Below, piece by piece: positions 8,487 to 64,000 of a DNA stretch of 64,000 bases. A program made the translations under genes and the position numbers. How positions within the stretch are numbered: the stretch's first letter is position 1; every line of letters begins with the position of its first letter. This DNA comes from Auanema rhodensis (Eukaryota; Animalia; Nematoda). The notes beneath the pieces were generated by a model that saw only the letters and a list, made by a program, of their open reading frames with translations, ran no database searches and was not told the DNA's origin. The stretch covers positions 14,074,001-14,138,000 of the forward strand of contig OZ059898.1 of the NCBI GenBank assembly GCA_964057225.1. Direction: 5' to 3'.

Positions 8487-8530
8487 TAGAATGAAAAGCA
8501 GAAACATATTTTTTTCAAACGTTTCACATC

Positions 8531-8870
8531 CGTTCCATTCGGACTCCCCATATATGTAGCTGAAGGGTTAGAGCCAGACGACCAGAGGACCGAGGAATGG
8601 CTCCGCCTTCCCTCGTTCCCTTGGTCGGGAGTTCGCCTCTTAGCAAGCTCATGGACGGCTTGTAGTTTAGTCTTTATACTTATATTTATCTTATTGTATT
8701 GTATCTTTATCTTTGTATATTATTGTTGTAGTTTCATGCCAATAAATCTTTCTCTCTTTTATCTTATGATTGACCTTATGCTCTTTATTCCTTACCGCTA
8801 CACCAAGGAATACTATGCGCGTCATAGTATAAACTACAATGGTTTATATTATCGACGCAGGAGCATAACG
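8531..8870 (+). mobile_element. Gypsy family 1 solo LTR (340 bp, last 5 nt lost)
   Basis: Near-identical to LTR 13423-13767 and flanked by array spacer on both sides. Confidence 0.92.
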
Positions 8871-8913
8871 TTCCACATCGAAAATTCAAAAATGGACAAG
8901 CTCAAGTATTCTT

Positions 8914-8926: not shown

Positions 8927-8930
8927 TGTA

Positions 8931-9002
8931 TGCGTTCGGGGGGAATCGAACCCCCGTCGAATGCTTGGAAGGCATCCATGCTGACCATTACACCACGAAC
9001 GC
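8931..9002 (-). tRNA. tRNA-Gly(TCC), first array copy (representative)
   Basis: Minus strand reads GCGTTCGTGGTGTAATGGTCAGCATGGATGCCTTCCAAGCATTCGACGGGGGTTCGATTCCCCCCGAACGCA. 7-bp acceptor stem, anticodon arm GATGC-CT TCC AA-GCATT, B box GGTTCGATTCC, no encoded CCA (eukaryotic). Confidence 0.97.
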
Positions 9003-11773
9003 TACGATGGCTCTTGAACTATTAGATTAGATGAGTTGACACATCTTTGACTTCATTGATAATTACGAATGAAAAGCAGAAACATATTTTTTCAACGTTT
9101 CACATCAAAAAATCAAAAATGGACAAGCTCAAGTATTTTCAAAATCTTTGCAACATATTGCATTCAAATCGTTCACAAAAAATGAAAAATGTATGCGTTC
9201 AGGGGGAATCGAACCCCCGTCGAATGCTTGGAAGGCATCCATGCTGACCATTACACCTCGAACGCTACGATGGCTCTTGAACTATTAGATTAGATGAGTT
9301 GACACATCTTTGACTTCATATATAATTACAGAATGAAAAGCAGAAACATATTTTTTTTAACGTTTCACATCAAAAAATCAAAAATGGACAAGCTCAAGTA
9401 TTTTCAAAATCTTTGCAACATATTGCAATCAAATCGTTCACAAAAAATGAAAAATGTATGCGTTCGGGGGGAATCGAACCCCCGTCGAATGCTTGGAAGG
9501 CATCCATGCTGACCATTACACCACGAACGCTACGATGGCTCTTGAACTATTAGATTAGATGAGTTTACACATCTTTGACTTCATTGATAATTACGAATGA
9601 AAAGCAGAAACATATTTTTTCAACGTTTCACATCAAAAAATCAAAAATGGACAAGCTCAAGTATTTTCAAAATCTTTGCAACATATTGCAAAACGTCAAA
9701 CCATTCTTAAAAAATGAAAAATGTATGCGTTCGGGGGGAATCGAACCCCCGTCGAATGCTTGGAAGGCATCCATGCTGACCATTACACCACGAACGCTAC
9801 AATAGGTTGTGAACTATTAGATTAGATGAGTTGACACATCTTTGACTTCATTGATAATTACGAATGAAAAGCAGTAACATATTTTTTTCAAACGTTTCAC
9901 ATCAAAAAATCAAAAATGGACAAGCTCAAGTATTTTCAAAATCTTTGCAACATATTGCAATCAAATCGTTCAGAAAAAATGAAAAATGTGTGCGTTCGGG
10001 GGGAATCGAACCCCCGTCGAATGCTTGGAAGGCATCCATGCTGACCATTACACCTCGAACGCTACGATGGCTCTTGAACTATTAGATTAGATGAGTTGAC
10101 ACATCTTTGACTTCATATATAATTACAGAATGAAAAGCAGAAACATATTTTTTTTAACGTTTCACATCAAAAAATCAAAAATGGACAAGCTCAAGTATTT
10201 TCAAAATCTTTGCAACATATTGCAAAACGTCAAACCATTCTTAAAAAATGAAAAATGTATGCGTTCGGGGGGAATCGAACCCCCGTCGAATGCTTGGAAG
10301 GCATCCATGCTGACCATTACACCACGAACGCTACGATGGCTCTTGAACTATTAGATTAGATGAGTTGACACATCTTTGACTTCATTGATAATTACGAATG
10401 AAAAGCAGAAACATATTTTTTCAACGTTTCACATCAAAAAATCAAAAATGGACAAGCTCAAGTATTTTCAAAATCTTTGCAACATATTGCATTCAAATCG
10501 TTCACAAAAAATGAAAAATGTATGCGTTCAGGGGGAATCGAACCCCCGTCGAATGCTTGGAAGGCATCCATGCTGACCATTACACCTCGAACGCTACGAT
10601 GGCTCTTGAACTATTTGATTAGATGAGTTGACACATCTTTGACTTCATTGATAATTACGAATGAAAAGCAGTAACATATTTTTTTCAAACGTTCCACATC
10701 GAAAATTCAAAAATGGACAAGCTCAAGTATTTTCAAAATCTTTGCAACATATTGCAAAACGTCAAACCATTCTTAAAAAATGAAAAATGTATGCGTTCGG
10801 GGGGAATCGAACCCCCGTCGAATGCTTGGAAGGCATCCATGCTGACCATTACACCACGAACGCTACAATAGGTTGTGAACTATTAGATTAGATGAGTTGA
10901 CACATCTTTGACTTCATTGATAATTACGAATGAAAAGCAGTAACATATTTTTTTCAAACGTTTCACATCAAAAAATCAAAAATGGACAAGCTCAAGTATT
11001 TTCAAAATCTTTGCAACATATTGCAAAACGTCAAACCATTCTTAAAAAATGAAAAATGTATGCGTTCGGGGGGAATCGAACCCCCGTCGAATGCTTGGAA
11101 GGCATCCATGCTGACCATTACACCACGAACGCTACAATAGGTTGTGAACTATTAGATTAGATGAGTTGACACATCTTTGACTTCATTGATAATTACGAAT
11201 GAAAAGCAGTAACATATTTTTTTCAAACGTTTCACATCAAAAAATCAAAAATGGACAAGCTCAAGTATTTTCAAAATCTTTGCAACATATTGCAATCAAA
11301 TCGTTCAGAAAAAATGAAAAATGTGTGCGTTCGGGGGGAATCGAACCCCCGTCGAATGCTTGGAAGGCATCCATGCTGACCATTACACCTCGAACGCTAC
11401 GATGGCTCTTGAACTATTAGATTAGATGAGTTGACACATCTTTGACTTCATATATAATTACAGAATGAAAAGCAGAAACATATTTTTTTTAACGTTTCAC
11501 ATCAAAAAATCAAAAATGGACAAGCTCAAGTATTTTCAAAATCTTTGCAACATATTGCAAAACGTCAAACCATTCTTAAAAAATGAAAAATGTATGCGTT
11601 CGGGGGGAATCGAACCCCCGTCGAATGCTTGGAAGGCATCCATGCTGACCATTACACCACGAACGCTACGATGGCTCTTGAACTATTAGATTAGATGAGT
11701 TGACACATCTTTGACTTCATATATAACTACAGAATGAAAAGCAGAAACATATTTTTTTCAAACGTTTCACATC

Positions 11774-12113
11774 CGTTCCATTCGGACTCCCCATATATGT
11801 AGCTGAAGGGTTAGAGCCAGACGACCAGAGGACCGAGGAATGGCTCCGCCTTCCCTCGTTCCCTTGGTCGGGAGTTCGCCTCTTAGCAAGCTCATGGACG
11901 GCTTGTAGTTTAGTCTTTATACTTATATTTATCTTATTGTATTGTATCTTTATCTTTGTATATTATTGTTGTAGTTTCATGCCAATAAATCTTTCTCTCT
12001 TTTATCTTATGATTGACCTTATGCTCTTTATTCCTTACCGCTACACCAAGGAATACTATGCGCGTCATAGTATAAACTACAATGGTTTATATTATCGACG
12101 CAGGAGCATAACG
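11774..12113 (+). mobile_element. Gypsy family 1 solo LTR
   Basis: Same sequence and same junctions as 8531-8870. Confidence 0.92.
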
Positions 12114-13422
12114 TTCCACATCGAAAATTCAAAAATGGACAAGCTCAAGTATTCTTAAAAAATGAAAAATGTATGCGTTCGGGGGGAATCGAACCCCCGT
12201 CGAATGCTTGGAAGGCATCCATGCTGACCATTACACCACGAACGCTACGATGGTTCTTGAACTATTAGATTAGATGAGTTGACACATCTTTGACTTCATT
12301 GATAATTACGAATGAAAAGCAGAAACATATTTTTTCAACGTTTCACATCAAAAAATCAAAAATGGACAAGCTCAAGTATTTTCAAAATCTTTGCAACATA
12401 TTGCAAAACGTCAAACCATTCTTAAAAAATGAAAAATGTATGCGTTCGGGGGGAATCGAACCCCCGTCGAATGCTTGGAAGGCATCCATGCTGACCATTA
12501 CACCACGAACGCTACAATAGGTTGTGAACTATTAGATTAGATGAGTTGACACATCTTTGACTTCATTGATAATTACGAATGAAAAGCAGTAACATATTTT
12601 TTTCAAACGTTTCACATCAAAAAATCAAAAATGGACAAGCTCAAGTATTTTCAAAATCTTTGCAACATATTGCAATCAAATCGTTCAGAAAAAATGAAAA
12701 ATGTGTGCGTTCGGGGGGAATCGAACCCCCGTCGAATGCTTGGAAGGCATCCATGCTGACCATTACACCTCGAACGCTACGATGGCTCTTGAACTATTAG
12801 ATTAGATGAGTTGACACATCTTTGACTTCATATATAATTACAGAATGAAAAGCAGAAACATATTTTTTTTAACGTTTCACATCAAAAAATCAAAAATGGA
12901 CAAGCTCAAGTATTTTCAAAATCTTTGCAACATATTGCAAAACGTCAAACCATTCTTAAAAAATGAAAAATGTATGCGTTCGGGGGGAATCGAACCCCCG
13001 TCGAATGCTTGGAAGGCATCCATGCTGACCATTACACCACGAACGCTACGATGGCTCTTGAACTATTAGATTAGATGAGTTGACACATCTTTGACTTCAT
13101 ATATAATTACAGAATGAAAAGCAGAAACATATTTTTTTCAAACGTTTCACATCAAAAATTCAAAAATGGACAAGCTCAAGTAATTTCAAAATCTTTGCAA
13201 CATATTGCAAAACGTCAAACCATTCTTAAAAAATGAAAAATGTATGCGTTCGGGGGGAATCGAACCCCCGTCGAATGCTTGGAAGGCATCCATGCTGACC
13301 ATTACACCACGAACGCTACAATAGGTTGTGAACTATTAGATTAGATGAGTTGACACATCTTTGACTTCATATATAATTACGAATGAAAAGCAGTAACATA
13401 TTTTTTTCAAACTTTTCACATC

Positions 13423-13767
13423 CGTTCCATTCGGACTCCCCATATATGTAGCTGAAGGGTTAGAGCCAGACGACCAGAGGACCGAGGAATGGCTCCGCCT
13501 TCCCTCGTTCCCTTGGTCGGGAGTTCGCCTCTTAGCAAGCTCATGGACGGCTTGTAGTTTAGTCTTTATACTTATATTTTTCTTATTGTATTGTATCTTT
13601 ATCTTTGTATATTATTGTTGTAGTTTCATGCCAATAAATCTTTCTCTCTTTTATCTTATGATTGACCTTATGCTCTTTATTCCTTACCGCTACACCAAGG
13701 AATACTATGCGCGTCATAGTATAAACTACAATGGTTTATATTATCGACGCAGGAGCATAACGGAACG
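13423..13767 (+). repeat. Family 1 5' LTR (345 bp)
   Basis: CGTTCCATT...AACGGAACG terminal inverted repeat, internal AATAAA, directly followed by the PBS. Confidence 0.92.
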
Positions 13768-13788
13768 TGGAGGTTCCACCTCGAACTC
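13768..13788 (+). promoter_or_regulatory. Primer-binding site, tRNA-Gln
   Basis: TGGAGGTTCCACC is complementary to the metazoan tRNA-Gln 3' end (...GGTGGAACCT-CCA). The following TCGAACTC is complementary to the T-loop. Confidence 0.85.
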
Positions 13789-16640
13789 ATCTTTTGAAAA
13801 AAAAAAAATTTTTTTTATTGTAAAAGTCCATTTTTGCATTCTAAATTATAAATTCCTCCACTTGAAACAACAAAATGAAGGCGCCAATTTGTTTTAAGGT
13901 ACAGATACAAGGGATCTCGCTTAAATGCGAGATAGGACCAATAAAAATTTTTGCCCACCGTCCTCAATTTAAAACCGTCTGAATGTCCACCCTTTTCTAT
14001 ATCGTATCTTGTACCGCTTCTCATGCCATTTTGAGGACGTTTGGATTGAAATAGAGGACAATTTCGCCAAACGAGAAATTATAATTGTTCACATTTTTTT
14101 TTTGGGCATAGAGAAGTTTGATTATTGGAACAAAAAGTTATAAGACGCGCGCAATTGATTATAGTTTGTATATTTTGTGGTCAGGACTAGAATTTTGAAA
14201 AATTATTATATTCAGACGTAAAAGATTATTTTACATATTATTTTGCGGGAAACCAAAAACGGTTACATAAATTGAATATAAAAAGAGACCACACTAGTCC
14301 GAAAAAGCCTGGTAAATCTGCAATAAGACTTCTCAGCTCTTATTTGACAGTCAGGTCAAGTTGGCGGAAGCATAACTGCTACGGATTTTATCCCCGTAGA
14401 TTATGTCACCTTCCTCAAATCATTTCGTTGTTTCAACTCATAAGATACCCCTTATTTCCTACAGTAATCCTAAGTAAATTGGAAATGTTTAAAAATAGAC
14501 GTATTTTTCTCATTTTTAAAAAGAAATTCGCTTAGGAAAACGCACTTTTGCTTATTTTGATCAAGAAAAAGGACAGCCTTTTCAATAACTCTCCTCAAAC
14601 CTCATTAGCATGCACAATGTCGAAAACATTTTGAGCAAAACATGCTATTTAAGGGAAAAGGAATGAGGAAAAGATTGCAAACATAAGTCCATTTTCTTGA
14701 CGAAAACAGAGCAAAGTGCACAAAAATAAAAACACAGAGTACAAACTTTATTCAGTCAATACCCATATTTGATTTGCAACCGAGTTCGAAACTCAGAGGC
14801 AAGAAACATAGGAGTTTCGCTCGCAATTAAATCTTCACTATATTCTAAACCTCGCGAAACCCTAAGTTCCAAACCAAATAATGAGTCATCATAAACAATA
14901 TAGATTTTAAACCATAATCTATATAATAAATAATAATAAAAATGACTCTTTTCCTGGTACCAGGCCCAAGGGCGTGCGGTTAATAAACCGGCCCTACCAT
15001 TATATACATGAGCGCATAGATCAACTAAGCACCTTCGACCAACAAGCTCCACTTCGGGAGCTACATCTACGAAGGTGGCAAAGTTTATATGGCCCTGCCC
15101 CAAATAATACATTTGGTGATCTTCGATAAACTAAAGTAATCAAATAATCAAACATAAAATGGAGATACACAAACCATTAAAATTATATCAAGATTTGGCC
15201 TATAAGCCAAAACTCCTTCTCCATCGTACTCAACGATGGATTCGTATAATTTCCACAGGACATAAGTCATGCCAGTGGGATTATAACGTTGGAAATCCAT
15301 TTTTTTTTCTTTCTTTCTTTTCTTTTCTTTTGTTTCTAACCTTAAAATAAATGTCCAAAGGCCGCAAAAGTACAAAGGGGATGACATGAATAAAGTTTTT
15401 TTTAAAGATTCTAGAGCAGTAAGAAAACAAAATTAGAGGAAAGTGCAAGAGCGGATAAAAATAGTTTTTGCGAAGAGATAAACATCATTAACTATAATAA
15501 GCTTACGGTAGATAGGCGGAGTCAGATTCCTGGCCAGGATTTGAAAAACTCCCTCTCATTTACCCTCCGCATCGCCCAGCAAAGCATGACTATCCTATTG
15601 CTCCCGAATCTTTCTCTCTCCCAACACACATCTAAAAGAATCTTACGCACCTTACGTCAACATCCCACACGTAGCTCACCATTCTCGGTTTTTCCAAACC
15701 AAGAGTAATATAAAGGTGGCCAAAAGATTCTCATCGGTTTTCCGAGCCCTTTACTCGTCCGATACCAACAGTGACGCTACTGTCGCAAGTCGTCGCAGAA
15801 GCCGTACCCGACTTCTTAGTGTTCAAATAGAAAAACCGCACCAACCAGCCGAGAAGCCGAAGCCGCAAGTCGACCAGTTTTATACTCCCCGAGAAGGAAC
15901 ATATTCACCTTCTGACGACACCTACGAAGATCCGGACTTCATCAAAGCCGACGACAGAAAAAATTTTTATATACATTCTTTTCTTTTCTGTAAATTGTAA
16001 AAGGAAAGTAACGGTGAATTAGAAAACTTTTTGATGAGAGATTAAGTGAGTAAACAACCAAAAATAAGGAATAAGTGAAAATATAATAGAAATAAATGGC
16101 TACCGTAATCCTATACGACCGATAGAGATAAAATTTTGCGCTAAACTGAGCTCCATATGTATCTCCAGGAAGAGACGAACATTGGCAGGCGCCTAAGCCA
16201 CACCCCATCTGAGTGGTAGCCTCCATTAGTACTCAAGGATTCATTCAGAGAGACATATGGAGACGAGTAAATTATTAACTAAAATTATCCCCATCATCAT
16301 TAGGATACGAGTAACCATGTAACCGAAATGTTTAATAATTCCTTAGTGTCTCACATAAATCACACATTCATGAAACAAAGAATTTTTTTTTATTACAGTA
16401 CTACAATGACTAAATTTATTTTCTAATCCTCCGTTACAAAATAACATAAAACCTATTATTGTATTCAAATTCTATCTTAATACCATAAAGAAACCTATTA
16501 AAACTATTTATATATCTTTCTACATGTAGATTTTGAAACTTTTAAATTTATTTGTAAACTCCTAGACTCTAAAACTCAGCTACATATACACTAAAAACTC
16601 TTTATATCGCGCGGACGCGAAAAATCTTTGAAAAAGGGCA

Positions 16641-16956
16641 CGTTCCATTCGGACTCCCCATATATGTAGCTGAAGGGTTAGAGCCAGACCACCAGAGGAC
16701 CGAGGAATTGCTCCGCCTTCCCTCGTTCCCTTGGTCGGGAGTTCGCCTCTTAGCAAGCTCATGGACGGCTTGTAGTTTAGTCTTTATACTTATATTTATC
16801 TTATTGTATTGTATCTTTATCTTTGTATATTATTGTTGTAGTTTCATGCCAATAAATCTTTCTCTCTTTTATCTTATGATTGACCTTATGCTCTTTATTC
16901 CTTACCGCTACACCAAGGAATACTATGCGCGTCATAGTATAAACTACAATGGTTTA
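16641..16956 (+). repeat. Family 1 3' LTR, lacking the last 29 nt
   Basis: Matches the 5' LTR with three substitutions seen by eye, and follows the PPT. Confidence 0.92.
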
Positions 16957-17253
16957 GGTAACCATATGGACTTTAATAGTGTGAATGCCATTGTAAAAGT
17001 AACAGAGAGTAGAGAAAAAGAAGTTTATTCAGAATATGGAAATACAATTATAAAAGCAAAATACAATAATCAAATAAATGAAACTACATGTTATGAGAAA
17101 GCCAACCTAGTTGCTTTCTCAGGGGTTTATATAGCAAAATATTAATTACAAATATAATTGAATTTATACAAAAAGTAGTTCAGGTCTAGTTTCTTATTGA
17201 ATTCTATTAACCAAAAGTCGGTTGACGTTGTCAACCGCCTTCTTTATAAGACA
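16955..17253 (-). repeat. Family 2 3' LTR, truncated at both ends (11 nt and 29 nt missing)
   Basis: Matches 20791-21089 with no difference seen. Confidence 0.92.
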
Positions 17254-19622: not shown

Positions 19623-20740
19623 CTTTGTTGGTTTCCTGGAAGGAAATTATTAACCAACGAAGACTGAGCTTATATTATACAAAACGTAAGAGACAATATG
19701 GGGTTGGTATGCGCGACTCCTGTTCCTGTCAGGGGGCCAGCCTGCAGCGGGTCTCTAGTCGGAGAATAGCCTGGTCAGGTTCATACACGAGTCCGCAACT
19801 ACGTGTGACCTTTAGCAAAGGACCAAGTTCTTATCTCTCGAAGAGGCATGAGATATGAGACAGTGGTCTGTGTATTGCTCCTTTTCAGTCATGGACAAGA
19901 TCAGGTACACAGGCTTCTCATACTCACTTTTCCAGACTTCTCTTACCTAAGCAAACCCCCAAAAGACGTTCCCTTTTAACGTTACTTCTGTTCCCCTGGG
20001 TCTTGCTAGGTGGGACCACTCAATTTCAAAATATTCTTTAATTCTCATATGGGACCAAAAGGGTAAATTTCAAATGATTGCGCGTCTTATATCAAAAAGT
20101 GTACGCCTCCGCGCGATGTCCCGAGAATGTCTGGTATTGTTTCTTACGGGGCTTTCTCATAAAAATGCGTTAGATATCAAGAATAGTGATTTTGTTTATG
20201 AATCAATGTTTTCAGAATGATTTATGAATAGATATTTTCAAAATTTAGCTTGTGATAAGATGTTTTCAAGATGACTTATGGGTAAGTGTTGCAATATGAA
20301 TAAATGTCTTTAAGATATTTCATGAATTGATAGTTTTTAATATTATTCGTGGTTAAATATTTTGATATGCTTGTTCCAAAAAGAGTTTTTATGCATTATA
20401 TGCCTTTAACATACAGGAAAGTAGAGGAATAAAGTAGGAATATAGATTGTAATAGATAATATGTATAAGACATTTTTTTTTTTTTTTTTTCAAATAGATA
20501 TATCAGAAATGATGTTAGAAGAATGATATTTAGAGATAAATTCGAATTACTAGATTAAATTGGAGTTTTTGTTTTAGATACAAAATTGACTTGAAAGTTT
20601 GAAATATAAAATTTAATTAGAATTTTTGGATATGAAATCAAGATAAATTTTTAGAGTAAAAAGGATTTCAAAGAAAGAGAAAGTAATTTAAAGGTGAGAA
20701 AAGTAGCGGCAATGGTCCATAGAGATTCGTCCCTTATAGA

Positions 20741-52700: not shown

Positions 52701-52769
52701 CAAAAATGGACTTTTACAATAAAAAAAATTTTTTTTTTTTCAAAAGATGAGTTCGAGGTGGAACCTCCA

Positions 52770-53114
52770 CGTTCCGTTATGCTCCTGCGTCGATAATATA
52801 AACCATTGTAGTTTATACTATGACGCGCATAGTATTCCTTGGTGTAGCGGTAAGGAATAAAGAGCATAAGGTCAATCATAAGATAAAAGAGAGAAAGATT
52901 TATTGGCATGAAACTACAACAATAATATACAAAGATAAAGATACAATACAATAAGATAAATATAAGTATAAAGACTAAACTACAAGCCGTCCATGAGCTT
53001 GCTAAGAGGCGAACTCCCGACCAAGGGAACGAGGGAAGGCGGAGCCATTCCTCGGTCCTCTGGTCGTCTGGCTCTAACCCTTCAGCTACATATATGGGGA
53101 GTCCGAATGGAACG
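52770..53114 (-). repeat. Family 1 LTR (345 bp) flanked by both PPT and PBS
   Basis: Reverse complement of 13423-13767, with PPT 53115-53125 on one side and PBS on the other. Confidence 0.93.
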
Positions 53115-53813
53115 TGCCCTTTTTCAAAGATTTTTCGCGTCCGCGCGATATAAAGAGTTTTTAGTGTATATGTAGCTGAGTTTTAGAGTCTAGGAGTTTA
53201 CAAATAAAATTAAAAGTTTTAAAATCTACATGTAGAAAGATATATAAATAATTTTTATAGGTTTCTTTATGGTATTAAGATAGAATTTGAATACAATAAT
53301 AGGTTTTATGTTATTTTGTAACGGAGGATTAGAAAATAAATTTAGTCATTGTAGTACTGTAATAAAAAAAAAAATTTTTTTTTGTTTCATGAATGTGTGA
53401 TTTATGTGAGATAATAAGGAATTATTAAACATTTCTGGTACATGGTTACTCGTATCCTAATGATGATGGGGATAATTTTATTTAATAATTTACTCGTCTC
53501 CATATGTCTCTCTGAATGAATCCTTGAGTACTAATGGAGGCTACCACTCAGATGGGGTGTGGCTTAGGCGCCTGCCAATGTTCGTCTCTTCCTGGAGATA
53601 CATATGGAGCTCAGTTTAGCGCAAAATTTTATCTCTATCGGTCGTATAGGATTACGGTAGCCATTTATTTCTATTATATTTTTGCTTATTCCTTATTTTT
53701 AGTTGTTTACCCACTTAATCTCTCATCAAAAAGTTTTCTAATTCACCGTTACTTCCATTTTACAATTTACAGAAAAGAAAAGAATGTATATAAAGTTATT
53801 TCTTGTCGTCTTT

Positions 53814-56558
53814 TCATGCTTTCTCTTTTTGATTTTTCATCCGTGGTAACCATAATTCGTCTCCATCTTCGTTCTCTGATTCCGGTTCGCTATCGGTGTT
53901 ATCTTGCTCGTTTCTTTTGATCACTCTAAGTATCTCTATATCGCTGTCCTCTTCTTCTTCTTCGTGATTGTTGCGTGTATTAGAGCGGGTATTGTGAGTG
54001 ATATTTTGAGTAGCGTTTGAGAAGAGTTTGAGATTATCCTTGTGGATATCTTGTATCTTTCCTGATGAATTCCTTATCTGCACCTTGGATCCTTGTACGT
54101 TAATAACTTCGTAAGGTCCGTCATAGCTTTTCCTCAGTTTCTGACCAATTTTATGTGACTTTATTGTTGTCATCACCATGTCGCCGGGTTGAATGTTCCT
54201 TTCGTGCGTCCTTTGTGTTCTATCCTTCTTCTTTCTGGCGTTTTCTTGGTTTTGGGCGATACGTTCACGTATTATTTGGTCTATTTTCATCATTTGAGGT
54301 CTTCTCGTGAGTAATTCTTCCGAAATCTCTTTGATTTTTGTTATGGTTCCCGGTAATTCGGCATCAATTTTCATTCTGCATTCTTTTCCAAAAAGTGCTA
54401 CGTATGGGGCTATGCCTGTTGTAGCATGCTGAATGTTATTGATAGCGAATGTAATTTTTGGCAATACACTATCCCAGTCGCTTAGATCTTCCTTCAAGTA
54501 GTGTGTTAATCCTTCCTCAAGAGTTCTGTGTAGTCTTTCGACTTGTCCGTTTGAGTTCTTTTGGTGAGGAAGGGTGGGTTCATGTTGAATTCCCAGTTTT
54601 GTACACATTTCTTCAAACTTTTGAGATACAAAATTAGATCCTCTATCGGTGATCAGTCGATGAGGCGGTCCGTATATGTATACAAAGTTGCGTAGAAATC
54701 TGTCAATTGTTATTTCTGTCGTAATTTGCGGTACTGCTATCGTTGTTGACCATTTAGTAAAAGCATCCTGGATGGTAATAACGTAAGTACAATTCCTTTT
54801 TGACGGGGGAAAAGGTCCCATTACATCCATATGAACTCGTTCAAAAGGCTTGGTCGGTATTTCAAATTGACCTATTGGCTGTACTGTCATAGAATGTGGG
54901 TCCTTCTTCCTTTGTGCGCATTTAATGCAGTTTTTGATATATATCATGATATCATTTTGCATGTTGGTCCAATAAAATCTCCGTAGGATAGCTTCTTTAG
55001 TTTTATTAATTCCTTGATGCGCTGCGATTGTAGGATCTTCGTGAAATAATTCTATTATCTCGTCCTTGATTGGATGATCTTGTGGCACAACGATTGCAGG
55101 ATGTGGTTTCTTGTCTGTTGGTTTTGTGTAGAGTAATCCATTTATAACGCAATATCTATCGTTAGAGACCATTTTCTTTTGCGTTCTATATTCGATGTCC
55201 GCGATTGTTTTCTTTATCCATAGAGTATTTAGTTGAATTTCTTTTATAGCAGGTGTATCAATAGTATTTATTCTGATCGATTCTGCGTTTTTCTTTTTCT
55301 TCTTTTCCGGCTTTGCATCATTTGCTTCATCGCCTATATAACGTGACAATGCATCACATACTTTATTGAGCTGGCCCTCTCTGTACCTTATCTCAATGTC
55401 GTATTCTTGTATTACTAACTGAAATTTAGCAAGACGACCAAATAGGTCTCTGCGAGTTAGTAAACTTGTGAGAGGGCGATGGTCAGTGATACATATAGTA
55501 TGCGTTCCCAGTATGTATGTGCGAAATTGATTCAGTGCGTATACTAACCCTAAGGCTTCAATTTCGATTGGTGCGTAATTGCGTTCCGCTTTTACCAGTT
55601 TTCTGCTGGCGAATGCGATAGGATGAAGATGCTTCAATGGTTGCGTGGGATCTTCTGGTTGCAATAATACTGCGCCCACTGCTATGTTGCTGCCTTCACT
55701 CTCGATAATGAATAATCGATCAGATTTTGGTGGACTTAATACGGGCGCTTGGGTGAGACTTCTTTTTAATCGATCTACAGCTTCCTGATGTTGCTTTTCC
55801 CAAGCGAATTCGGTATCCGTCTTTGTCAAATCGTACAATGGGCTTGCGATACTTGCAAAATCTTTAATGAATTTGCGAAAAAATCCAACCATTCCTAAGA
55901 ATGCGCGAACGCCTGTTGCGTTCTTTGGTGCCGGATATTCTTGTATCGCAGCCACTTTTTGAGGGTCGGGTTTTATTCCTTCTCTTCCAATTATTAATCC
56001 GAGAAATTTTACTTCTGGTTGAGCAAAGGCACATTTCTTTAACTTAATTTTCATTCCCAAACTTTCGACCGCATGTAATAATTCGTCGATATCTTCAAGG
56101 TGTTGCTTTCTTGTATCAGAGATTATCAGCAGATCGTCCAAGTATACAAATAATTTGCAAGAGCATTTACTTTGCAAATATCTTACTGCTGTTTGAAAAG
56201 TATGAGGGGCTCCGCAGAGACCCATAGGCATTCTTTTATATTGATACGTGCCTGATGTTGTTGTAAATGCTGTTAAATGACGATCAGATTTACGTAGTGA
56301 TATTTGAAAAAATCCTGATACTAAATCGAAGTTTGAGAAGAATTGAGCTCCAGCTGCCATGTCAACTATATCCGATATGCTTGGTATAACGTATGTTTGT
56401 TTACGCGTGACACTATTGAGGGCTCGAAAATCTGTCACGAACCTATATGTCTCATCCTTCTTCTTCACTAGCACAGCAGGGCTATTGAAGAGGGATGTAG
56501 AGGGTTCGATTATGCCTTGCTCTAGCATTTCTTTTACTTGCTTTTCCACTTCTTCCTG
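53814..56558 (-). CDS. pol: Ty3/Gypsy Pol (RT-RNase H-integrase), 5'-truncated
   Basis: RT GIIEPSTSLFNSPAVLVKKKD...DFRALN...MPMGL...YLDD; RNase H PIAFASRKL...IEALG...TDHRPL; IN HHCC, HMDVMGP, TDRGSNF, NGQVERLH, GPY motif; acidic tail. The RT-RH-IN order is Gypsy. Gag and protease are removed by the junction at ~56559. Confidence 0.95.
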   Translation of the reverse strand, partial: QEEVEKQVKEMLEQGIIEPSTSLFNSPAVLVKKKDETYRFVTDFRALNSVTRKQTYVIPSISDIVDMAAGAQFFSNFDLVSGFFQISLRKSDRHLTAFTTTSGTYQYKRMPMGLCGAPHTFQTAVRYLQSKCSCKLFVYLDDLLIISDTRKQHLEDIDELLHAVESLGMKIKLKKCAFAQPEVKFLGLIIGREGIKPDPQKVAAIQEYPAPKNATGVRAFLGMVGFFRKFIKDFASIASPLYDLTKTDTEFAWEKQHQEAVDRLKRSLTQAPVLSPPKSDRLFIIESEGSNIAVGAVLLQPEDPTQPLKHLHPIAFASRKLVKAERNYAPIEIEALGLVYALNQFRTYILGTHTICITDHRPLTSLLTRRDLFGRLAKFQLVIQEYDIEIRYREGQLNKVCDALSRYIGDEANDAKPEKKKKKNAESIRINTIDTPAIKEIQLNTLWIKKTIADIEYRTQKKMVSNDRYCVINGLLYTKPTDKKPHPAIVVPQDHPIKDEIIELFHEDPTIAAHQGINKTKEAILRRFYWTNMQNDIMIYIKNCIKCAQRKKDPHSMTVQPIGQFEIPTKPFERVHMDVMGPFPPSKRNCTYVITIQDAFTKWSTTIAVPQITTEITIDRFLRNFVYIYGPPHRLITDRGSNFVSQKFEEMCTKLGIQHEPTLPHQKNSNGQVERLHRTLEEGLTHYLKEDLSDWDSVLPKITFAINNIQHATTGIAPYVALFGKECRMKIDAELPGTITKIKEISEELLTRRPQMMKIDQIIRERIAQNQENARKKKDRTQRTHERNIQPGDMVMTTIKSHKIGQKLRKSYDGPYEVINVQGSKVQIRNSSGKIQDIHKDNLKLFSNATQNITHNTRSNTRNNHEEEEEDSDIEILRVIKRNEQDNTDSEPESENEDGDELWLPRMKNQKEKA

Positions 56559-59500
56559 TCAAAATCTTTGCAACATATTGCAATCAAATCATTCACAAAA
56601 AATGAAAAATGTATGCGTTCGGGGGGAATCGAACCCCCGTCGAATGCTTGGAAGGCATCCATGCTGACCATTACACCACGAACGCTACGATGGCTCTTGA
56701 ACTATTTGATTAGATGAGTTGACACATCTTTGACTTCATTGATAATTACGAATGAAAAGCAGTAACATATTTTTTTCAAACGTTCCACATCGAAAATTCA
56801 AAAATGGACAAGCTCAAGTATTTTCAAAATCTTTGCAACATATTGCAATCAAATCATTCACAAAAAATGAAAAATGTATGCGTTCGGGGGGAATCGAACC
56901 CCCGTCGAATGCTTGGAAGGCATCCATGCTGACCATTACACCACGAACGCTACGATGGCTCTTGAACTATTTGATTAGATGAGTTGACACATCTTTGACT
57001 TCATTGATAATTACGAATGAAAAGCAGTAACATATTTTTTTCAAACGTTTCACATCAAAAATTCAAAAATGGACAAGCTCAAGTACTTTCAAAATCTTTG
57101 CAACATATTGCAAAACGTCAAACCATTCTTAAAAAATGAAAAATGTATGCGTTCGGGGGGAATCGAACCCCCGTCGAATGCTTGGAAGGCATCCATGCTG
57201 ACCATTACACCACGAACGCTACAATAGGTTGTGAACTATTAGATTAGATGAGTTGACACATCTTTGACTTCATATATAATTACGAATGAAAAGCAGTAAC
57301 ATATTTTTTTCAAACGTTTCACATCAAAAAATCAAAAATGGACAAGCTCAAGTATTTTCAAAATCTTTGCAACATATTGCAATCAAATCGTTCACAAAAA
57401 ATGAAAAATGTATTCGTTCGGGGGGAATCGAACCCCCGTCGAATGCTTGGAAGGCATCCATGCTGACCATTACACCACGAACGCTACGATGGCTCTTGAA
57501 CTATTAGATTAGATGAGTTGACACATCTTTGACTTCATTGATAATTACGAATGAAAAGCAGTAACATATTTTTTTCAAACGTTTCACATCAAAAAATCAA
57601 AAATGGACAAGCTCAAGTATTTTCAAAATCTTTGCAACATATTGCAATCAAATCATTCACAAAAAATGAAAAATGTATGCGTTCGGGGGGAATCGAACCC
57701 CCGTCGAATGCTTGGAAGGCATCCATGCTGACCATTACACCACGAACGCTACGATGGCTCTTGAACTATTAGATTAGATGAGTTGACACATCTTTGACTT
57801 CATATATAATTACAGAATGAAAAGCGGAAACATATTTTTTTCAAACGTTTCACATCAAAAATTCAAAAATGGACAAGCTCAAGTACTTTCAAAATCTTTG
57901 CAACATATTGCAAAACGTCAAACCATTCTTAAAAAATGAAAAATGTATGCGTTCGGGGGGAATCGAACCCCCGTCGAATGCTTGGAAGGCATCCATGCTG
58001 ACCATTACACCACGAACGCTACAATAGGTTGTGAACTATTAGATTAGATGAGTTGACACATCTTTGACTTCATTGATAATTACGAATGAAAAGCAGAAAC
58101 ATATTTTTTTCAAACGTTTCACATCAAAAAATCAAAAATGGACAAGCTCAAGTATTTTCAAAATCTTTGCTACATATTGCAAAACGTCAAACCATTCTTA
58201 AAAAATGAAAAATATATGCGTTCGGGGGGAATCGAACCCCCGTCGAATGCTTGGAAGGCATCCATGCTGACCATTACACCACGAACGCTACAATAGGTTG
58301 TGAACTATTAGATTAGATGAGTTGACACATCTTTGACTTCATTGATAATTACGAATGAAAAGCAGAAACATATTTTTTTCAAACGTTTCACATCAAAAAT
58401 TCAAAAATGGACAAGCTCAAGTATTTTCAAAATCTTTGCAACATATTGCAATCAAATCATTCACAAAAAATGAAAAATGTATGCGTTCGGGGGGAATCGA
58501 ACCCCCGTCGAATGCTTGGAAGGCATCCATGCTGACCATTACACCACGAACGCTACGATGGCTCTTGAACTATTAGATTAGATGAGTTGACACATCTTTG
58601 ACTTCATTGATAATTACGAATGAAAAGCAGAAACATATTTTTTTCAAACGTTTCACATCAAAAATTCAAAAATGGACAAGCTCAAGTATTTTCAAAATCT
58701 TTGCAACATATTGCAATCAAATCATTCACAAAAAATGAAAAATGTATGCGTTCGGGGGGAATCGAACCCCCGTCGAATGCTTGGAAGGCATCCATGCTGA
58801 CCATTACACCACGAACGCTACAATAGGTTGTGAACTATTAGATTAGATGAGTTGACACATCTTTGACTTCATTGATAATTACGAATGAAAAGCAGAAACA
58901 TATTTTTTTCAAACGTTTCACATCAAAAATTCAAAAATGGACAAGCTCAAGTACTTTCAAAATCTTTGCAACATATTGCAAAACGTCAAACCATTCTTAA
59001 AAAATGAAAAATGTATGCGTTCGGGGGGAATCGAACCCCCGTCGAATGCTTGGAAGGCATCCATGCTGACCATTACACCACGAACGCTACGATGGCTCTT
59101 GAACTATTAGATTAGATGAGTTGACACATCTTTGACTTCATATATAATTACGAATGAAAAGCAGAAACATATTTTTTTCAAACGTTTCACATCAAAAATT
59201 CAAAAATGGACAAGCTCAAGTACTTTCAAAATCTTTGCAACATATTGCAAAACGTCAAACCATTCTTAAAAAATGAAAAATATATGCGTTCGGGGGGAAT
59301 CGAACCCCCGTCGAATGCTTGGAAGGCATCCATGCTGACCATTACACCACGAACGCTACAATAGGTTGTGAACTATTAGATTAGATGAGTTGACACATCT
59401 TTGACTTCATTGATAATTACGAATGAAAAGCAGAAACATATTTTTTTCAAACGTTTCACATCAAAAATTCAAAAATGGACAAGCTCAAGTATTTTCAAAA

Positions 59501-62500
59501 TCTTTGCAACATATTGCAATCAAATCATTCACAAAAAATGAAAAATGTATGCGTTCGGGGGGAATCGAACCCCCGTCGAATGCTTGGAAGGCATCCATGC
59601 TGACCATTACACCACGAACGCTACGATGGCTCTTGAACTATTAGATTAGATGAGTTGACACATCTTTGACTTCATATATAATTACGAATGAAAAGCAGAA
59701 ACATATTTTTTTCAAACGTTTCACATCAAAAATTCAAAAATGGACAAGCTCAAGTATTTTCAAAATCTTTGCAACATATTGCAATCAAATCATTCACAAA
59801 AAATGAAAAATGTATGCGTTCGGGGGGAATCGAACCCCCGTCGAATGCTTGGAAGGCATCCATGCTGACCATTACACCACGAACGCTACGATGGCTCTTG
59901 AACTATTAGATTAGATGAGTTGACACATCTTTGACTTCATATATAATTACGAATGAAAAGCAGAAACATATTTTTTTCAAACGTTTCACATCAAAAATTC
60001 AAAAATGGACAAGCTCAAGTACTTTCAAAATCTTTGCAACATATTGCAAAACGTCAAACCATTCTTAAAAAATGAAAAATGTATGCGTTCGGGGGGAATC
60101 GAACCCCCGTCGAATGCTTGGAAGGCATCCATGCTGACCATTACACCACGAACGCTACAATAGGTTGTGAACTATTAGATTAGATGAGTTGACACATCTT
60201 TGACTTCATATATAATTACGAATGAAAAGCAGAAACATATTTTTTTCAAACGTTTCACATCAAAAATTCAAAAATGGACAAGCTCAAGTACTTTCAAAAT
60301 CTTTGCAACATATTGCAAAACGTCAAACCATTCTTAAAAAATGAAAAATGTATGCGTTCGGGGGGAATCGAACCCCCGTCGAATGCTTGGAAGGCATCCA
60401 TGCTGACCATTACACCACGAACGCTACAATAGGTTGTGAACTATTAGATTAGATGAGTTGACACATCTTTGACTTCATTGATAATTACGAATGAAAAGCA
60501 GTAACATAGTTCTTTAAACGTTTCACGTGAAAAGTTAGAAAATGGACAAGCTAAAGTACTTTCAAAATCTTTGCAACATATTGCAAAACGTCAAATCATT
60601 CAGCAAAAATGAAAAATGTGTGCGTTCGGGGGGAATCGAACCCCCGTCGAATGCTTGGAAGGCATCCATGCTGACCATTACACCACGAACGCTACAATAG
60701 GTTGTGAACTATTAGATTAGATGAGTTGACACATCTTTGACTTCATTGATAATTACGAATGAAAAGCAGTAACATAGTTCTTTAAACGTTTCACGTGAAA
60801 AGTTAGAAAATGGACAAGCTAAAGTACTTTCAAAATCTTTGCAACATATTGCAATCAAATCATTCACAAAAAATGAAAAATGTTTGCGTTCGGGGGGAAT
60901 CGAACCCCCGTCGAATGCTTGGAAGGCATCCATGCTGACCATTACACCACGAACGCTACAATACGTTGTGAACTATTAGATTAGATGAGTTGACACATCT
61001 TTGACTTCATTGATAATTACGAATGAAAAGCAGTAACATAGTTCTTTAAACGTTTCACGTGAAAAGTTAGAAAATGGACAAGCTAAAGTACTTTCAAAAT
61101 CTTTGCAACATATTGCAATCAAATCATTCACAAAAAATGAAAAATGTTTGCGTTCGGGGGGAATCGAACCCCCGTCGAATGCTTGGAAGGCATCCATGCT
61201 GACCATTACACCACGAACGCTACAATAGGTTGTGAACTATTAGATTAGATGAGTTGACACATCTTTGACTTCATTGATAATTACGAATGAAAAGCAGAAA
61301 CATATTTTTTTCAAACGTTTCACATCAAAAATTCAAAAATGGACAAGCTCAAGTACTTTCAAAATCTTTGCAACATATTGCAATCAAATCATTCACAAAA
61401 AATGAAAAATGTTTGCGTTCGGGGGGAATCGAACCCCCGTCGAATGCTTGGAAGGCATCCATGCTGACCATTACACCACGAACGCTACAATAGGTTGTGA
61501 ACTATTAGATTAGATGAGTTGACACATCTTTGATTTCATTGATAATTACGAATGAAAAGCAGTAACATATTTTTTTCAAACGTTTCACATCAAAAAATCA
61601 AAAATGGACAAGCTCAAGTATTTTCAAAATCTTTGCAACATATTGCAATCAAATCATTCACAAAAAATGAAAAATGTATGCGTTCGGGGGGAATCGAACC
61701 CCCGTCGAATGCTTGGAAGGCATCCATGCTGACCATTACACCACGAACGCTACAATAGGTTGTGAACTATTAGATTAGATGAGTTGACACATCTTTGACT
61801 TCATTGATAATTACGAATGAAAAGCAGTAACATATTTTTTTCAAACGTTTCACATCAAAAAATCAAAAATGGACAAGCTCAAGTATTTTCAAAATCTTTG
61901 CAACATATTGCAATCAAATCATTCACAAAAAATGAAAAATGTATGCGTTCGGGGGGAATCGAACCCCCGTCGAATGCTTGGAAGGCATCCATGCTGACCA
62001 TTACACCACGAACGCTACAATAGGTTGTGAACTATTAGATTAGATGAGTTGACACATCTTTGACTTCATTGATAATTACGAATGAAAAGCAGTAACATAG
62101 TTCTTTAAACGTTTCACGTGAAAAGTTAGAAAATGGACAAGCTAAAGTACTTTCAAAATCTTTGCAACATATTGCAAAACGTCAAATCATTCAGCAAAAA
62201 TGAAAAATGTTTGCGTTCGGGGGGAATCGAACCCCCGTCGAATGCTTGGAAGGCATCCATGCTGACCATTACACCACGAACGCTACAATAGGTTGTGAAC
62301 TATTAGATTAGATGAGTTGACACATCTTTGACTTCATTGATAATTACGAATGAAAAGCAGTAACATAGTTCTTTAAACGTTTCACGTGAAAAGTTAGAAA
62401 ATGGACAAGCTAAAGTACTTTCAAAATCTTTGCAACATATTGCAAAACGTCAAATCATTCAGCAAAAATGAAAAATGTTTGCGTTCGGGGGGAATCGAAC

Positions 62501-64000
62501 CCCCGTCGAATGCTTGGAAGGCATCCATGCTGACCATTACACCACGAACGCTACAATAGGTTGTGAACTATTAGATTAGATGAGTTGACACATCTTTGAC
62601 TTCATTGATAATTACGAATGAAAAGCAGAAACATATTTTTTTCAAACGTTTCACATCAAAAATTCAAAAATGGACAAGCTCAAGTACTTTCAAAATCTTT
62701 GCAACATATTGCAATCAAATCATTCACAAAAAATGAAAAATGTTTGCGTTCGGGGGGAATCGAACCCCCGTCGAATGCTTGGAAGGCATCCATGCTGACC
62801 ATTACACCACGAACGCTACGATGGCTCTTGAACTATTAGATTAGATGAGTTGACACATCTTTGACTTCATTGATAATTACGAATGAAAAGCAGAAACATA
62901 TTTTTTTCAAACGTTTCACATCAAAAATTCAAAAATGGACAAGCTCAAGTATTTTCAAAATCTTTGCAACATATTGCAATCAAATCATTCACAAAAAATG
63001 AAAAATGTATGCGTTCGGGGGGAATCGAACCCCCGTCGAATGCTTGGAAGGCATCCATGCTGACCATTACACCACGAACGCTACGATGGCTCTTGAACTA
63101 TTAGATTAGATGAGTTGACACATCTTTGACTTCATATATAATTACGAATGAAAAGCAGAAACATATTTTTTTCAAACGTTTCACATCAAAAATTCAAAAA
63201 TGGACAAGCTCAAGTACTTTCAAAATCTTTGCAACATATTGCAAAACGTCAAACCATTCTTAAAAAATGAAAAATGTATGCGTTCGGGGGGAATCGAACC
63301 CCCGTCGAATGCTTGGAAGGCATCCATGCTGACCATTACACCACGAACGCTACAATAGGTTGTGAACTATTAGATTAGATGAGTTGACACATCTTTGACT
63401 TCATATATAATTACGAATGAAAAGCAGAAACATATTTTTTTCAAACGTTTCACATCAAAAATTCAAAAATGGACAAGCTCAAGTACTTTCAAAATCTTTG
63501 CAACATATTGCAAAACGTCAAACCATTCTTAAAAAATGAAAAATGTATGCGTTCGGGGGGAATCGAACCCCCGTCGAATGCTTGGAAGGCATCCATGCTG
63601 ACCATTACACCACGAACGCTACAATAGGTTGTGAACTATTAGATTAGATGAGTTGACACATCTTTGACTTCATTGATAATTACGAATGAAAAGCAGTAAC
63701 ATAGTTCTTTAAACGTTTCACGTGAAAAGTTAGAAAATGGACAAGCTAAAGTACTTTCAAAATCTTTGCAACATATTGCAATCAAATCATTCACAAAAAA
63801 TGAAAAATGTTTGCGTTCGGGGGGAATCGAACCCCCGTCGAATGCTTGGAAGGCATCCATGCTGACCATTACACCACGAACGCTACAATACGTTGTGAAC
63901 TATTAGATTAGATGAGTTGACACATCTTTGACTTCATTGATAATTACGAATGAAAAGCAGTAACATAGTTCTTTAAACGTTTCACGTGAAAAGTTAGAAA
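56559..64000 (-). repeat. tRNA-Gly(TCC) tandem array, block 3 (28 genes, continues past window)
   Basis: First tRNA 56614-56685, last 63812-63883. Confidence 0.95.

What the first reader, a model, noticed from the sequence alone, without database searches (positions are those of the whole stretch)
8488..64000. Array of about 155 intact tRNA-Gly(TCC) genes
Seen: over 40 kb of head-to-tail ~265-bp units, each with a complete tRNA, A/B boxes and a T-run terminator. Recurrent variation is concentrated in the spacer and the anticodon looks unchanged in every copy read. This is far above ordinary single-isoacceptor dosage at one locus. Inference: either selected dosage amplification (GGA is the preferred Gly codon in C. 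elegans, notably in cuticle collagens) or a tRNA-based satellite with a structural or heterochromatic role.
Basis: partly seen in the sequence, partly recalled or inferred. Interest (0 to 1): 0.75.

Follow-up and report, generated by a model that had tools for sequence, protein, structure and literature searches.

The report
Tandem array of tRNA-Gly genes
At least 156 head-to-tail copies of one glycine tRNA gene sit in a transposon-riddled stretch of a nematode genome (not the C. elegans reference). The array is real and unusually large, but similar tRNA arrays are already known, and sequence alone cannot show whether the copies are used.

Summary
ARAGORN, Rfam and BLAST each find 156 tRNA-Gly(TCC) genes, all on the minus strand, from 8931 to 63883, in 263-270 bp units. 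The array runs off the right end of the window.

- The array is not continuous. LTR-retrotransposon blocks of 7.9 kb and 5.0 kb split it into runs of 16, 112 and 28 genes. Four identical 579-bp units carry a co-amplified LTR remnant.
- 135 copies are identical. 21 carry one change (two of them a second), and in 13 it is probably damaging (U8, G18, C56, acceptor mismatches, a T-stem deletion). The anticodon is TCC, and a T5 terminator starts 5 nt after the gene, in all 156.
- Diversity is about 15-fold lower in the tRNA than in the spacer. None of 17 independent common variants lies in the tRNA (P=0.005), but singletons are equally dense in both.

The transposon proteins match only clade V nematodes at 41-63% identity, and C. 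elegans has just 36 Gly-TCC genes genome-wide. The host is therefore a rhabditid nematode, not the C. elegans reference.

Best reading: a homocluster of Pol III-competent genes grown by unequal exchange. Expression is untested. The closest precedent is the tRNA arrays in somatically eliminated DNA of Auanema rhodense.

The parts
8931..13316 (-). Array run 1: 16 tRNA-Gly(TCC) genes in 263-270 bp units, including one 579-bp unit (11595-12173). All five U8>A variant copies lie here.
21223..51652 (-). Array run 2: 112 tRNA-Gly(TCC) genes. It includes three ~2.69-kb higher-order blocks (22287-24975, 24976-27666, 27667-30357), each opening with an identical 579-bp unit.
56614..63883 (-). Array run 3: 28 tRNA-Gly(TCC) genes. 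The repeat continues to the window end at 64000.
8931..9002 (-). Representative canonical tRNA-Gly(UCC) gene, 72 nt, the sequence shared by 135 of 156 copies. Cloverleaf, A73 discriminator, C2:G71 and G3:C70 pairs, B box GGTTCGATTCC.
23392..23654 (-). Representative 263-bp unit: the 72-nt gene (23392-23463) plus a 191-bp AT-rich spacer (29% GC). The T5 and T6 terminator runs lie just downstream of each gene (to the left on the + strand).
11595..12173 (-). A 579-bp unit: an intact tRNA gene plus a 316-bp LTR with 24 bp of element X's internal sequence, and a ~40-bp spacer deletion. Three further units (22287-22865, 24976-25554, 27667-28245) differ from it by 0-1 mismatch, and the left edge 8488-8930 holds a 100% identical copy of the LTR remnant. 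One transposon remnant was therefore amplified with the array.
13423..16956 (+). Element X: a ~3.5-kb LTR element without a pol gene, with 316-bp LTRs 99% identical. It is inserted in a spacer.
16955..21089 (-). Element Y: a ~4.1-kb LTR element with 299-bp LTRs 100% identical. Its 792-aa ORF (17244-19622) has a Retrotrans_gag domain. It abuts the end of X.
51653..56613 (-). Rearranged Ty3/Gypsy-type element. It holds inverted copies of X's LTR and internal parts (51754-53810) and a 911-aa RT-RNaseH-integrase ORF (53814-56549), cut off at its 5' end where the array resumes.
83..8487 (+). Left flank: a BEL/Pao LTR retrotransposon. One uninterrupted 2399-aa ORF (83-7282) carries Peptidase_A17, integrase and Phlebovirus-G2-type env domains. 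The array spacer starts abruptly at 8488.

Best explanation
This is a genuine tandem homocluster of at least 156 cytosolic tRNA-Gly(UCC) genes in a transposon-rich region of a clade V (rhabditid) nematode genome.

Each ~265-bp unit is a self-contained type-2 Pol III gene. Internal A and B boxes would recruit TFIIIC and then TFIIIB, and transcription would end at the T5 run 5 nt past the gene (inferred from sequence, not shown).

The array grew and is kept similar by unequal exchange and segmental duplication. This is shown by higher-order blocks, mosaic flank haplotypes and a co-amplified transposon remnant.

Over the array's longer history the tRNA body and terminator were kept constant while the spacer diverged. 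That implies selection on the gene product, or repeated homogenisation from functional copies. Individual copies are now too redundant to be protected one by one and are picking up mutations at the spacer's rate. About 8% already carry probably damaging changes.

The most likely role is bulk supply of the tRNA that reads GGA, from at least a subset of copies. GGA is the commonest Gly codon in the ORFs present here, and TCC/glycine is the most frequent anticodon among tRNA genes in the C. elegans and C. briggsae references. Expression itself is inferred, not shown.
For: Gene competence:
- 156 of 156 copies match RF00005 above threshold, the canonical copy at 68.2 bits against 29.
- TCC anticodon in all copies.
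- T5 terminator at +5 in all copies, B box intact in 147.
- 135 identical copies plus 8 with only structure-preserving changes.

Constraint:
- Diversity (pi) is 0.0042 in the tRNA against 0.061 in the spacer.
- Variants present in 8 or more copies: 0 in the tRNA against 29 spacer columns, which form 17 linkage groups (P=0.005).
- The terminator stretch +1..+17 is also quiet (pi 0.016), next to patches of 0.12-0.17.

Growth by unequal exchange:
- 85 distinct unit sequences among 149, with repeated runs of unit types.
- The ~2.69-kb blocks differ by 12-36 mismatches.
- The 579-bp units are identical.
- Two upstream-flank haplotypes (89 and 51 units) are interleaved along the array and recombined with downstream haplotypes.

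Demand:
- GGA is 60% of Gly codons in the three ORFs.
- TCC/glycine is the most frequent anticodon among tRNA genes in C. elegans (36 genes) and C. briggsae (60) (PMC13010820).

Host: transposon proteins match only nematodes of clade V best.
Against: - No expression, Pol III occupancy or read-depth data can be had with these tools.
- Singleton variants are as dense in the tRNA (0.056 per column) as in the spacer (0.061), so no current purifying selection on single copies is visible.
- 13 copies carry changes at U8, G18, C56, the acceptor stem or the T stem.
- Three LTR elements have landed in or beside the array, two of them with LTRs 99-100% identical, and transposon debris was amplified with it. 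That is typical of silent, repeat-rich DNA.
- Arabidopsis tRNA clusters keep Pol III cis-elements yet are silent (PMC7544208).
- Several common spacer variants sit in A/T runs, which mutate (and are mis-sequenced) more easily than the GC-rich tRNA, so part of the contrast may be mutational.
Confidence: 0.55

Rival explanations
1. A satellite-like by-product. A tRNA gene happened to seed a tandem repeat that expanded by unequal crossing-over in a repeat-tolerant (heterochromatic, low-recombination or germline-restricted) region. The copies are largely or wholly silenced and add little to the tRNA pool. Their uniformity reflects youth and homogenisation rather than selection.
For: - Rare variants are as frequent in the tRNA as in the spacer.
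- 8% of copies carry probably damaging changes.
- Transposon debris was amplified together with the genes.
- Recent LTR insertions sit in or beside the array.
- Arabidopsis tRNA clusters with conserved Pol III elements are silent (PMC7544208).
- In Auanema rhodense, tRNA arrays lie among satellite blocks that are discarded from somatic cells.
Against: - None of 17 independent common variants lies in the 72 tRNA columns (P=0.005).
- The terminator is also conserved.
- Units differ by 4.6% on average, so the array is not so young that no variation could have accumulated in the gene.
- The amplified isoacceptor is the one with the highest gene count in related worms.
Confidence: 0.35
2. An assembly artefact. 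A much shorter array was inflated by the assembler looping through near-identical repeats.
For: No reads are available to check depth. Tandem repeats are a known weak point of assemblies. Some blocks are very similar: the 2.69-kb blocks differ by only 12 mismatches.
Against: - 85 distinct unit sequences among 149.
- The longest exact self-repeat is 2,026 bp and only six exceed 900 bp, which is within the reach of long reads.
- Three different unique transposon insertions anchor the runs.
- Variants form an ordered, non-periodic pattern.
Confidence: 0.07
3. A tRNA-derived SINE or other retroposed element that happens to lie in tandem.
For: tRNA-derived SINEs are common in animals, and the region is full of retroelements.
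Against: - The tRNA is complete, canonical and followed at once by its own terminator, so no longer transcript would be made.
- There is no A-rich or simple-repeat tail and no target-site duplication.
- Strict head-to-tail spacing, and no dispersed or truncated copies.
Confidence: 0.02

Closest known systems
Tandem tRNA, 5S rRNA and U2 gene arrays in the germline-restricted DNA of the nematode Auanema rhodense (bioRxiv 10.64898/2026.08.27.747507)
   Same: Both are in rhabditid nematodes. That genome has thousands of mostly non-pseudogene tRNA loci (19,554 annotated, 215 called pseudogenes), arranged as tandem blocks in repeat-rich DNA. One of the window's transposon proteins has an Auanema relative at 63% identity over half its length.
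   Different: It is not shown that this window comes from Auanema or from eliminated DNA. That paper states ncRNA density is always below 20% per 10 kb, whereas here the tRNA covers 27% of the array (72 of ~265 bp). Its table of tRNA types is an image and could not be read.
Arabidopsis thaliana clustered tRNA genes: Pro homoclusters and Ser-Tyr-Tyr heteroclusters (Hummel et al. 2020, PMC7544208)
   Same: Tandem repeats of complete tRNA genes with conserved Pol III cis-elements, present as extra copies besides dispersed genes.
   Different: Those are plant clusters and far smaller (from my own knowledge, tens of copies), and they are shown to be silenced through DNA methylation. Copy number here is at least 156, in a single isoacceptor, and the chromatin state is unknown.
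Entamoeba histolytica tRNA gene arrays
   Same: Tandemly repeated tRNA-bearing units forming long arrays. They were long cited as the only case of tRNA tandem repeats (PMC2888827).
   Different: From my own knowledge, Entamoeba units usually carry several different tRNA genes plus short tandem repeats, account for nearly all tRNA genes of the genome, and are proposed to lie at chromosome ends. Here there is one gene per unit, and it is not known whether dispersed copies exist.
Human 1q23.3 tRNA variable-number tandem repeat (Darrow and Chadwick 2014, PMC4041453; seen only as a reference)
   Same: A metazoan tandem repeat whose unit carries tRNA genes and varies in copy number.
   Different: From my own knowledge, it has a multi-kilobase unit with several tRNA genes and tens of copies, and is proposed to act as a chromatin boundary. 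Here the unit is 265 bp with a single gene.
Tandem 5S rRNA gene arrays (for example oocyte-type 5S genes of Xenopus; own knowledge)
   Same: Short Pol III gene plus AT-rich spacer, repeated head to tail in large numbers, homogenised by unequal exchange, with only part of the copies active or stage-specific.
   Different: A different gene and promoter type (type 1 rather than type 2). For 5S, tandem organisation is the rule. For animal tRNA genes it is the exception.

Membership tests
Eukaryotic cytosolic tRNA-Gly(UCC) gene (type-2 Pol III gene) | Cloverleaf matching the tRNA covariance model | tested here: met
   RF00005 matches all 156 above the gathering score, 68.2 bits for the canonical copy, full model 1-71. 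ARAGORN calls all 156.
Eukaryotic cytosolic tRNA-Gly(UCC) gene (type-2 Pol III gene) | Anticodon UCC, and eukaryote-type glycine identity set (A73, C2:G71, G3:C70; identity set from my own knowledge) | tested here: met
   Anticodon tcc in 156 of 156. A73, C2:G71 and G3:C70 can be read in the canonical sequence. Three copies have G71>A and one has C72>A.
Eukaryotic cytosolic tRNA-Gly(UCC) gene (type-2 Pol III gene) | Internal A and B box promoter elements and a downstream T-run terminator | tested here: met
   B box GGTTCGANTCC intact in 147 of 156. The A-box region TGGTGTAATGGTC is unchanged in 150 (148 as counted, plus the two 71-nt copies, which the fixed-length slice mis-registers). T5 at +5 in 156 of 156.
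Eukaryotic cytosolic tRNA-Gly(UCC) gene (type-2 Pol III gene) | Transcribed by Pol III, processed and aminoacylated | not testable with these tools
   Needs ChIP and tRNA sequencing. Intact cis-elements do not prove activity (PMC7544208).
Tandem tRNA gene homocluster | One isoacceptor repeated head to tail with a regular unit | tested here: met
   156 copies on one strand. 149 of 155 spacings are 263-270 bp. TRF gives 94-97% match.
Satellite DNA | Long tandem array of a short unit, with higher-order structure and homogenisation | tested here: met
   At least 41 kb of repeat. Higher-order blocks of 2.69 kb, and repeated runs of unit types.
Satellite DNA | Non-coding unit evolving without constraint on any embedded gene | tested here: not met
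   The unit holds a complete gene. Common variants avoid it (0 of 17 groups, P=0.005), and diversity is 15-fold lower than in the spacer. Rare variants show no such deficit, so the result holds for older variation only.
Satellite DNA | Heterochromatic packaging or a structural chromosomal role | not testable with these tools
   Transposon accumulation is compatible with this but is not a test.
tRNA-derived SINE | tRNA-related head joined to a body and tail, in dispersed copies with target-site duplications | tested here: not met
   A terminator follows directly after a full tRNA. There is no tail, no duplications and no truncated copies, and the arrangement is strictly tandem.
Germline-restricted (somatically eliminated) repeat of rhabditid nematodes | Lower coverage in somatic than in germline DNA, lying beyond an elimination site | not testable with these tools
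   No reads are available. The elimination motif of A. rhodense is shown only as a figure. There are no telomere repeats in the window.

The most novel reading that the evidence does not exclude
The array is a germline-restricted reservoir of tRNA-Gly(UCC) genes. It would be present and transcribed in the germline and early embryo, when translation demand is extreme, and then discarded from somatic cells by programmed DNA elimination. That would be a tRNA counterpart of oocyte-type 5S genes, and would give eliminated DNA in rhabditid nematodes a concrete function.
Probability: 0.12. Interest if true: 0.75.

Novelty: new member of a known kind. Interest (0 to 1): 0.42.

Why it matters
Animal tRNA genes are normally scattered or grouped in mixed islands (PMC13578239). 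A single-isoacceptor array of more than 150 copies at one site is rare.

If the copies are active, the array is a natural experiment in how far tRNA gene dosage can be pushed to serve one codon. It also shows how selection acts on a gene family so redundant that single copies escape it. The split seen here, between old variants excluded from the tRNA and young variants not excluded, is what that situation predicts.

If the copies are silent or eliminated from somatic cells, the array is one more example of functional-looking Pol III genes behaving as satellite DNA. That bears on why rhabditid nematodes accumulate and discard such repeats.

Either way, tRNA gene counts from new long-read assemblies cannot be read as tRNA supply without expression data.

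Tried and rejected
- **Exact look-up** of the three long transposon ORFs among 15 billion proteins found nothing, so the source species could not be named that way.
- **Two word searches** with transposon proteins gave only distant relatives, 41-63% identity, in clade V nematodes. They place the host broadly but not to genus. The third search and the large representative search were not spent, because the claim does not rest on these proteins.
- **Two scans of metagenome contigs** for the tRNA, one with 40 exact bases and one with the anticodon stem left free, found nothing. No related locus could be compared. The bacterial genome and viral collections were not scanned because a nematode tRNA array is not expected there.
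- **Full-text search** for the tRNA's own sequence strings found nothing, so I could not check whether it equals the Caenorhabditis Gly-TCC sequence. I have not relied on my memory of that sequence.
- **Supplementary tables** of the Auanema and Caenorhabditis tRNA papers are not held as text.
- **Transcription-associated mutagenesis:** I tested whether spacer diversity falls with distance from the gene, a possible signature. It does not do so monotonically (Spearman -0.03, p=0.66). Only two hypervariable patches next to the gene stand out, and each is essentially one linked haplotype difference.
- **MFE folding** of the single sequence does not return the cloverleaf. This is usual for tRNAs, and the covariance model is the proper test.
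- **SINE and assembly-artefact readings** were considered and rejected, as set out under the rival explanations.
- **Operator rules:** nothing in the window looked human. No spliced gene model was needed.
Full report
**Observation.** Three independent methods agree on 156 tRNA-Gly genes with anticodon TCC, all on the minus strand, from 8931 to 63883.
- ARAGORN finds 156.
- The Rfam tRNA model matches all 156 above its gathering score. The canonical copy scores 68.2 bits against a threshold of 29 and covers the full model.
- BLAST of one copy gives 156 full-length hits, no fragments, all in one orientation.

Tandem Repeats Finder reports periods of 263-269 bp at 94-97% match. Gene-to-gene spacing is 263 bp (53 units), 265 (40), 269 (33), and 264-270 for the rest. 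The repeat runs into the right end of the window. On the left it abuts a transposon whose start is off-window. The count is therefore a lower bound.

**Anatomy of a unit.** Read in the sense of the tRNA, each unit has a 72-nt gene followed by a 191-bp spacer of 29% GC.
- The gene has a standard cloverleaf, an A73 discriminator, and C2:G71 and G3:C70 pairs. From my own knowledge of tRNA identity rules, this is the eukaryotic glycine identity set.
- It has an A-box region TGGTGTAATGGTC and a perfect B box GGTTCGATTCC.
- A T5 run starts 5 nt after the 3' end in all 156 copies, and a second T5-6 run follows.

**Corrections to the observation.** The span 8488-64000 is not one array but three runs of 16, 112 and 28 genes.
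- Between runs 1 and 2 (13317-21222) lie two nested LTR elements. Element X (13423-16956) is about 3.5 kb, has no pol gene and has 316-bp LTRs 99% identical. Element Y (16955-21089) has 299-bp LTRs 100% identical and a 792-aa gag-containing ORF.
- Between runs 2 and 3 (51653-56613) lies a rearranged Ty3/Gypsy-type element. It holds inverted pieces of X and a 911-aa RT-RNaseH-integrase ORF, cut off where the array resumes.
- The left flank (83-8487) is a BEL/Pao element. Its single 2399-aa ORF ends in a Phlebovirus-G2-type envelope domain.
- Four 579-bp units, starting at 11595, 22287, 24976 and 27667, each hold an intact tRNA gene, the LTR of X, 24 bp of X's interior and a ~40-bp spacer deletion. 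They differ by 0-1 base, and the left edge at 8488-8930 carries a 100% identical copy of the same remnant. One decayed insertion was therefore copied along with the array.

**'Intact' holds for most copies, not all.** 135 copies are identical. The other 21 carry one change each, and two of them carry a second:

| Change | Copies | Likely effect |
|---|---|---|
| C62>U | 7 | keeps a G-U pair |
| G57>A | 1 | conservative |
| C65>U | 2 | keeps a G-U pair; occurs only in two of the U8>A copies |
| U8>A | 5 | probably damaging |
| G71>A | 3 | acceptor mismatch, and an identity pair |
| T-stem G deletion | 2 | probably damaging |
| G18>C | 1 | probably damaging |
| C56>G | 1 | probably damaging |
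| C72>A | 1 | acceptor mismatch |

By my reading, about 143 copies look fully competent and 13 look impaired.

**Is the tRNA more conserved than the spacer?** I aligned the 149 normal-length units.
- Nucleotide diversity is 0.0042 in the 72 tRNA columns and 0.061 in the 198 spacer columns.
- Variants carried by 8 or more units number 0 in the tRNA and 29 columns in the spacer.
- Grouping columns in strong linkage leaves 17 independent common variants, none in the tRNA (P=0.005 if placed at random).
- Singletons are equally dense: 4 in 72 columns against 12 in 198 (0.056 against 0.061 per column, p=1.0).

My reading is that over the array's longer history, changes in the gene did not spread while changes in the spacer did. 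That points to selection on the product or homogenisation from good copies. Selection on any one of 156 redundant copies is now too weak to see. The terminator stretch is also quiet (pi 0.016), between hypervariable patches at -1..-20 (0.12) and +18..+40 (0.17).

Three caveats apply. Several spacer variants lie in A/T runs that mutate or are mis-called easily. The counts of rare variants are small. The two hypervariable patches are each essentially one linked haplotype difference.

**How the array grew.**
- Among 149 units there are 85 distinct sequences, and runs of unit types recur along the array.
- Three ~2.69-kb blocks (22287-30357) differ from each other by 12-36 mismatches.
- Two versions of the 15 bp just upstream of the gene (89 and 51 units) are interleaved along the array and recombined with downstream-flank versions.

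This is the pattern expected from repeated unequal exchange and segmental duplication. It also argues against a simple assembly loop. The longest exact self-repeat is 2,026 bp, only six exceed 900 bp, and three unique transposon blocks anchor the runs. Copy number still needs read-depth confirmation.

The evidence says otherwise.
- None of the three long ORFs exists as an exact sequence among about 15 billion proteins.
- The Gypsy pol is closest to Heterorhabditis (49%), C. japonica (44%), and partial proteins of Auanema sp. JU1783 (63% over half) and C. brenneri (61% over 45%).
- The BEL/Pao pol is closest to hookworms and Haemonchus (40-41%), and to C. nigoni at only 31%.
- The C. elegans reference has 36 Gly-TCC genes genome-wide and C. 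briggsae has 60 (PMC13010820), far fewer than this one locus.

The host is a clade V (rhabditid) nematode poorly represented in protein databases. I could not name it. Scans of metagenome contigs for the tRNA found nothing.

**What is known.**
- Tandem tRNA arrays were long considered peculiar to Entamoeba (PMC2888827).
- In metazoans, compact single-family clusters are uncommon compared with mixed islands (PMC13578239).
- Arabidopsis has Pro and Ser-Tyr-Tyr tandem clusters. Their Pol III elements are conserved, yet they are transcriptionally silent (PMC7544208).
- The closest precedent is a 2026 preprint on Auanema rhodense. [quoted passage not shown]
- That paper says ncRNA density never exceeds 20% per 10 kb. 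Here the tRNA covers 27% of the array. This window is therefore either from another species or was counted differently.

**Verdict.** The structure is a real, very large tRNA-Gly(UCC) homocluster of Pol III-competent genes, shaped by unequal exchange and invaded by retrotransposons.

| Reading | Confidence |
|---|---|
| At least part of the array is or recently was used for tRNA supply | 0.55 |
| Largely silent, satellite-like expansion | 0.35 |
| Assembly inflation | 0.07 |
| SINE | 0.02 |

In favour of tRNA supply are the exclusion of old variants from gene and terminator, GGA at 60% of Gly codons in the local ORFs, and TCC/glycine being the most frequent anticodon among tRNA genes in the C. 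elegans and C. briggsae references. The most novel reading still open is a germline-restricted tRNA reservoir removed by programmed DNA elimination, at about 0.12.

I rate it a new member of a known kind, of moderate interest. It is unusual in size for an animal, has direct recent precedent in related nematodes, and its function cannot be decided without reads and expression data.

Noticed in passing
window 83-7282 (+): One uninterrupted 2399-aa ORF of a BEL/Pao retrotransposon that runs gag, protease, RT, integrase and a Phlebovirus-G2-type envelope together (Pfam E 2e-41 for G2). It looks recently active. Its closest relatives are in hookworms and Haemonchus at about 41% identity.
   Followed up: partly
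window 7579-8091 (+): A 170-aa ORF downstream of the env region, with Cys/His spacing like retroviral zinc knuckles but no Pfam match. It may be a fragment of another element's gag or an accessory gene of the BEL/Pao element.
   Followed up: no
window 8183-8252: A perfect (TC)n microsatellite of about 23 repeats, with TTC-rich flanks, in the 3' part of the left-flank element just before the array.
   Followed up: no
window 16955-17253 and 20791-21089: The LTRs of element Y are 100% identical over 299 bp, which implies a very recent insertion. Y sits exactly at the end of element X's right LTR, and the spacer resumes out of register after it. The site was therefore rearranged and is not a clean nested insertion.
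   Followed up: partly
window 51754-53810 compared with 13423-16956: The insert between runs 2 and 3 holds the 3' interior, one LTR and the 5' interior of element X in permuted, inverted order, next to an intact pol ORF. This suggests X is a pol-less derivative of this Gypsy-type element, and that tandem or circular intermediates were involved.
   Followed up: partly
every spacer, e.g. window 23592-23607 (+): Each spacer carries TTGCAATATGTTGCAA, two copies of the self-complementary hexamer TTGCAA 4 bp apart, in one of the least variable parts of the spacer (pi about 0.001 for alignment columns 45-60). It could be a protein-binding site. This is unexplained.
   Followed up: no
15 bp upstream of each tRNA gene, e.g. 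window 9003-9017 and 13317-13331: Two sharply different versions of the immediate 5' flank, TCAAGAGCCATCGTA (89 units) and TCACAACCTATTGTA (51 units), differ at 5 linked positions within 9 bp and are interleaved along the array. The array may descend from two founder genes, or from conversion by another locus.
   Followed up: partly
window 9194-12777: All five U8>A variant copies lie in run 1, at spacings that follow local duplications (9194/10523 and 9991/11326/12706). An apparently damaging variant has therefore been copied several times without being removed.
   Followed up: partly
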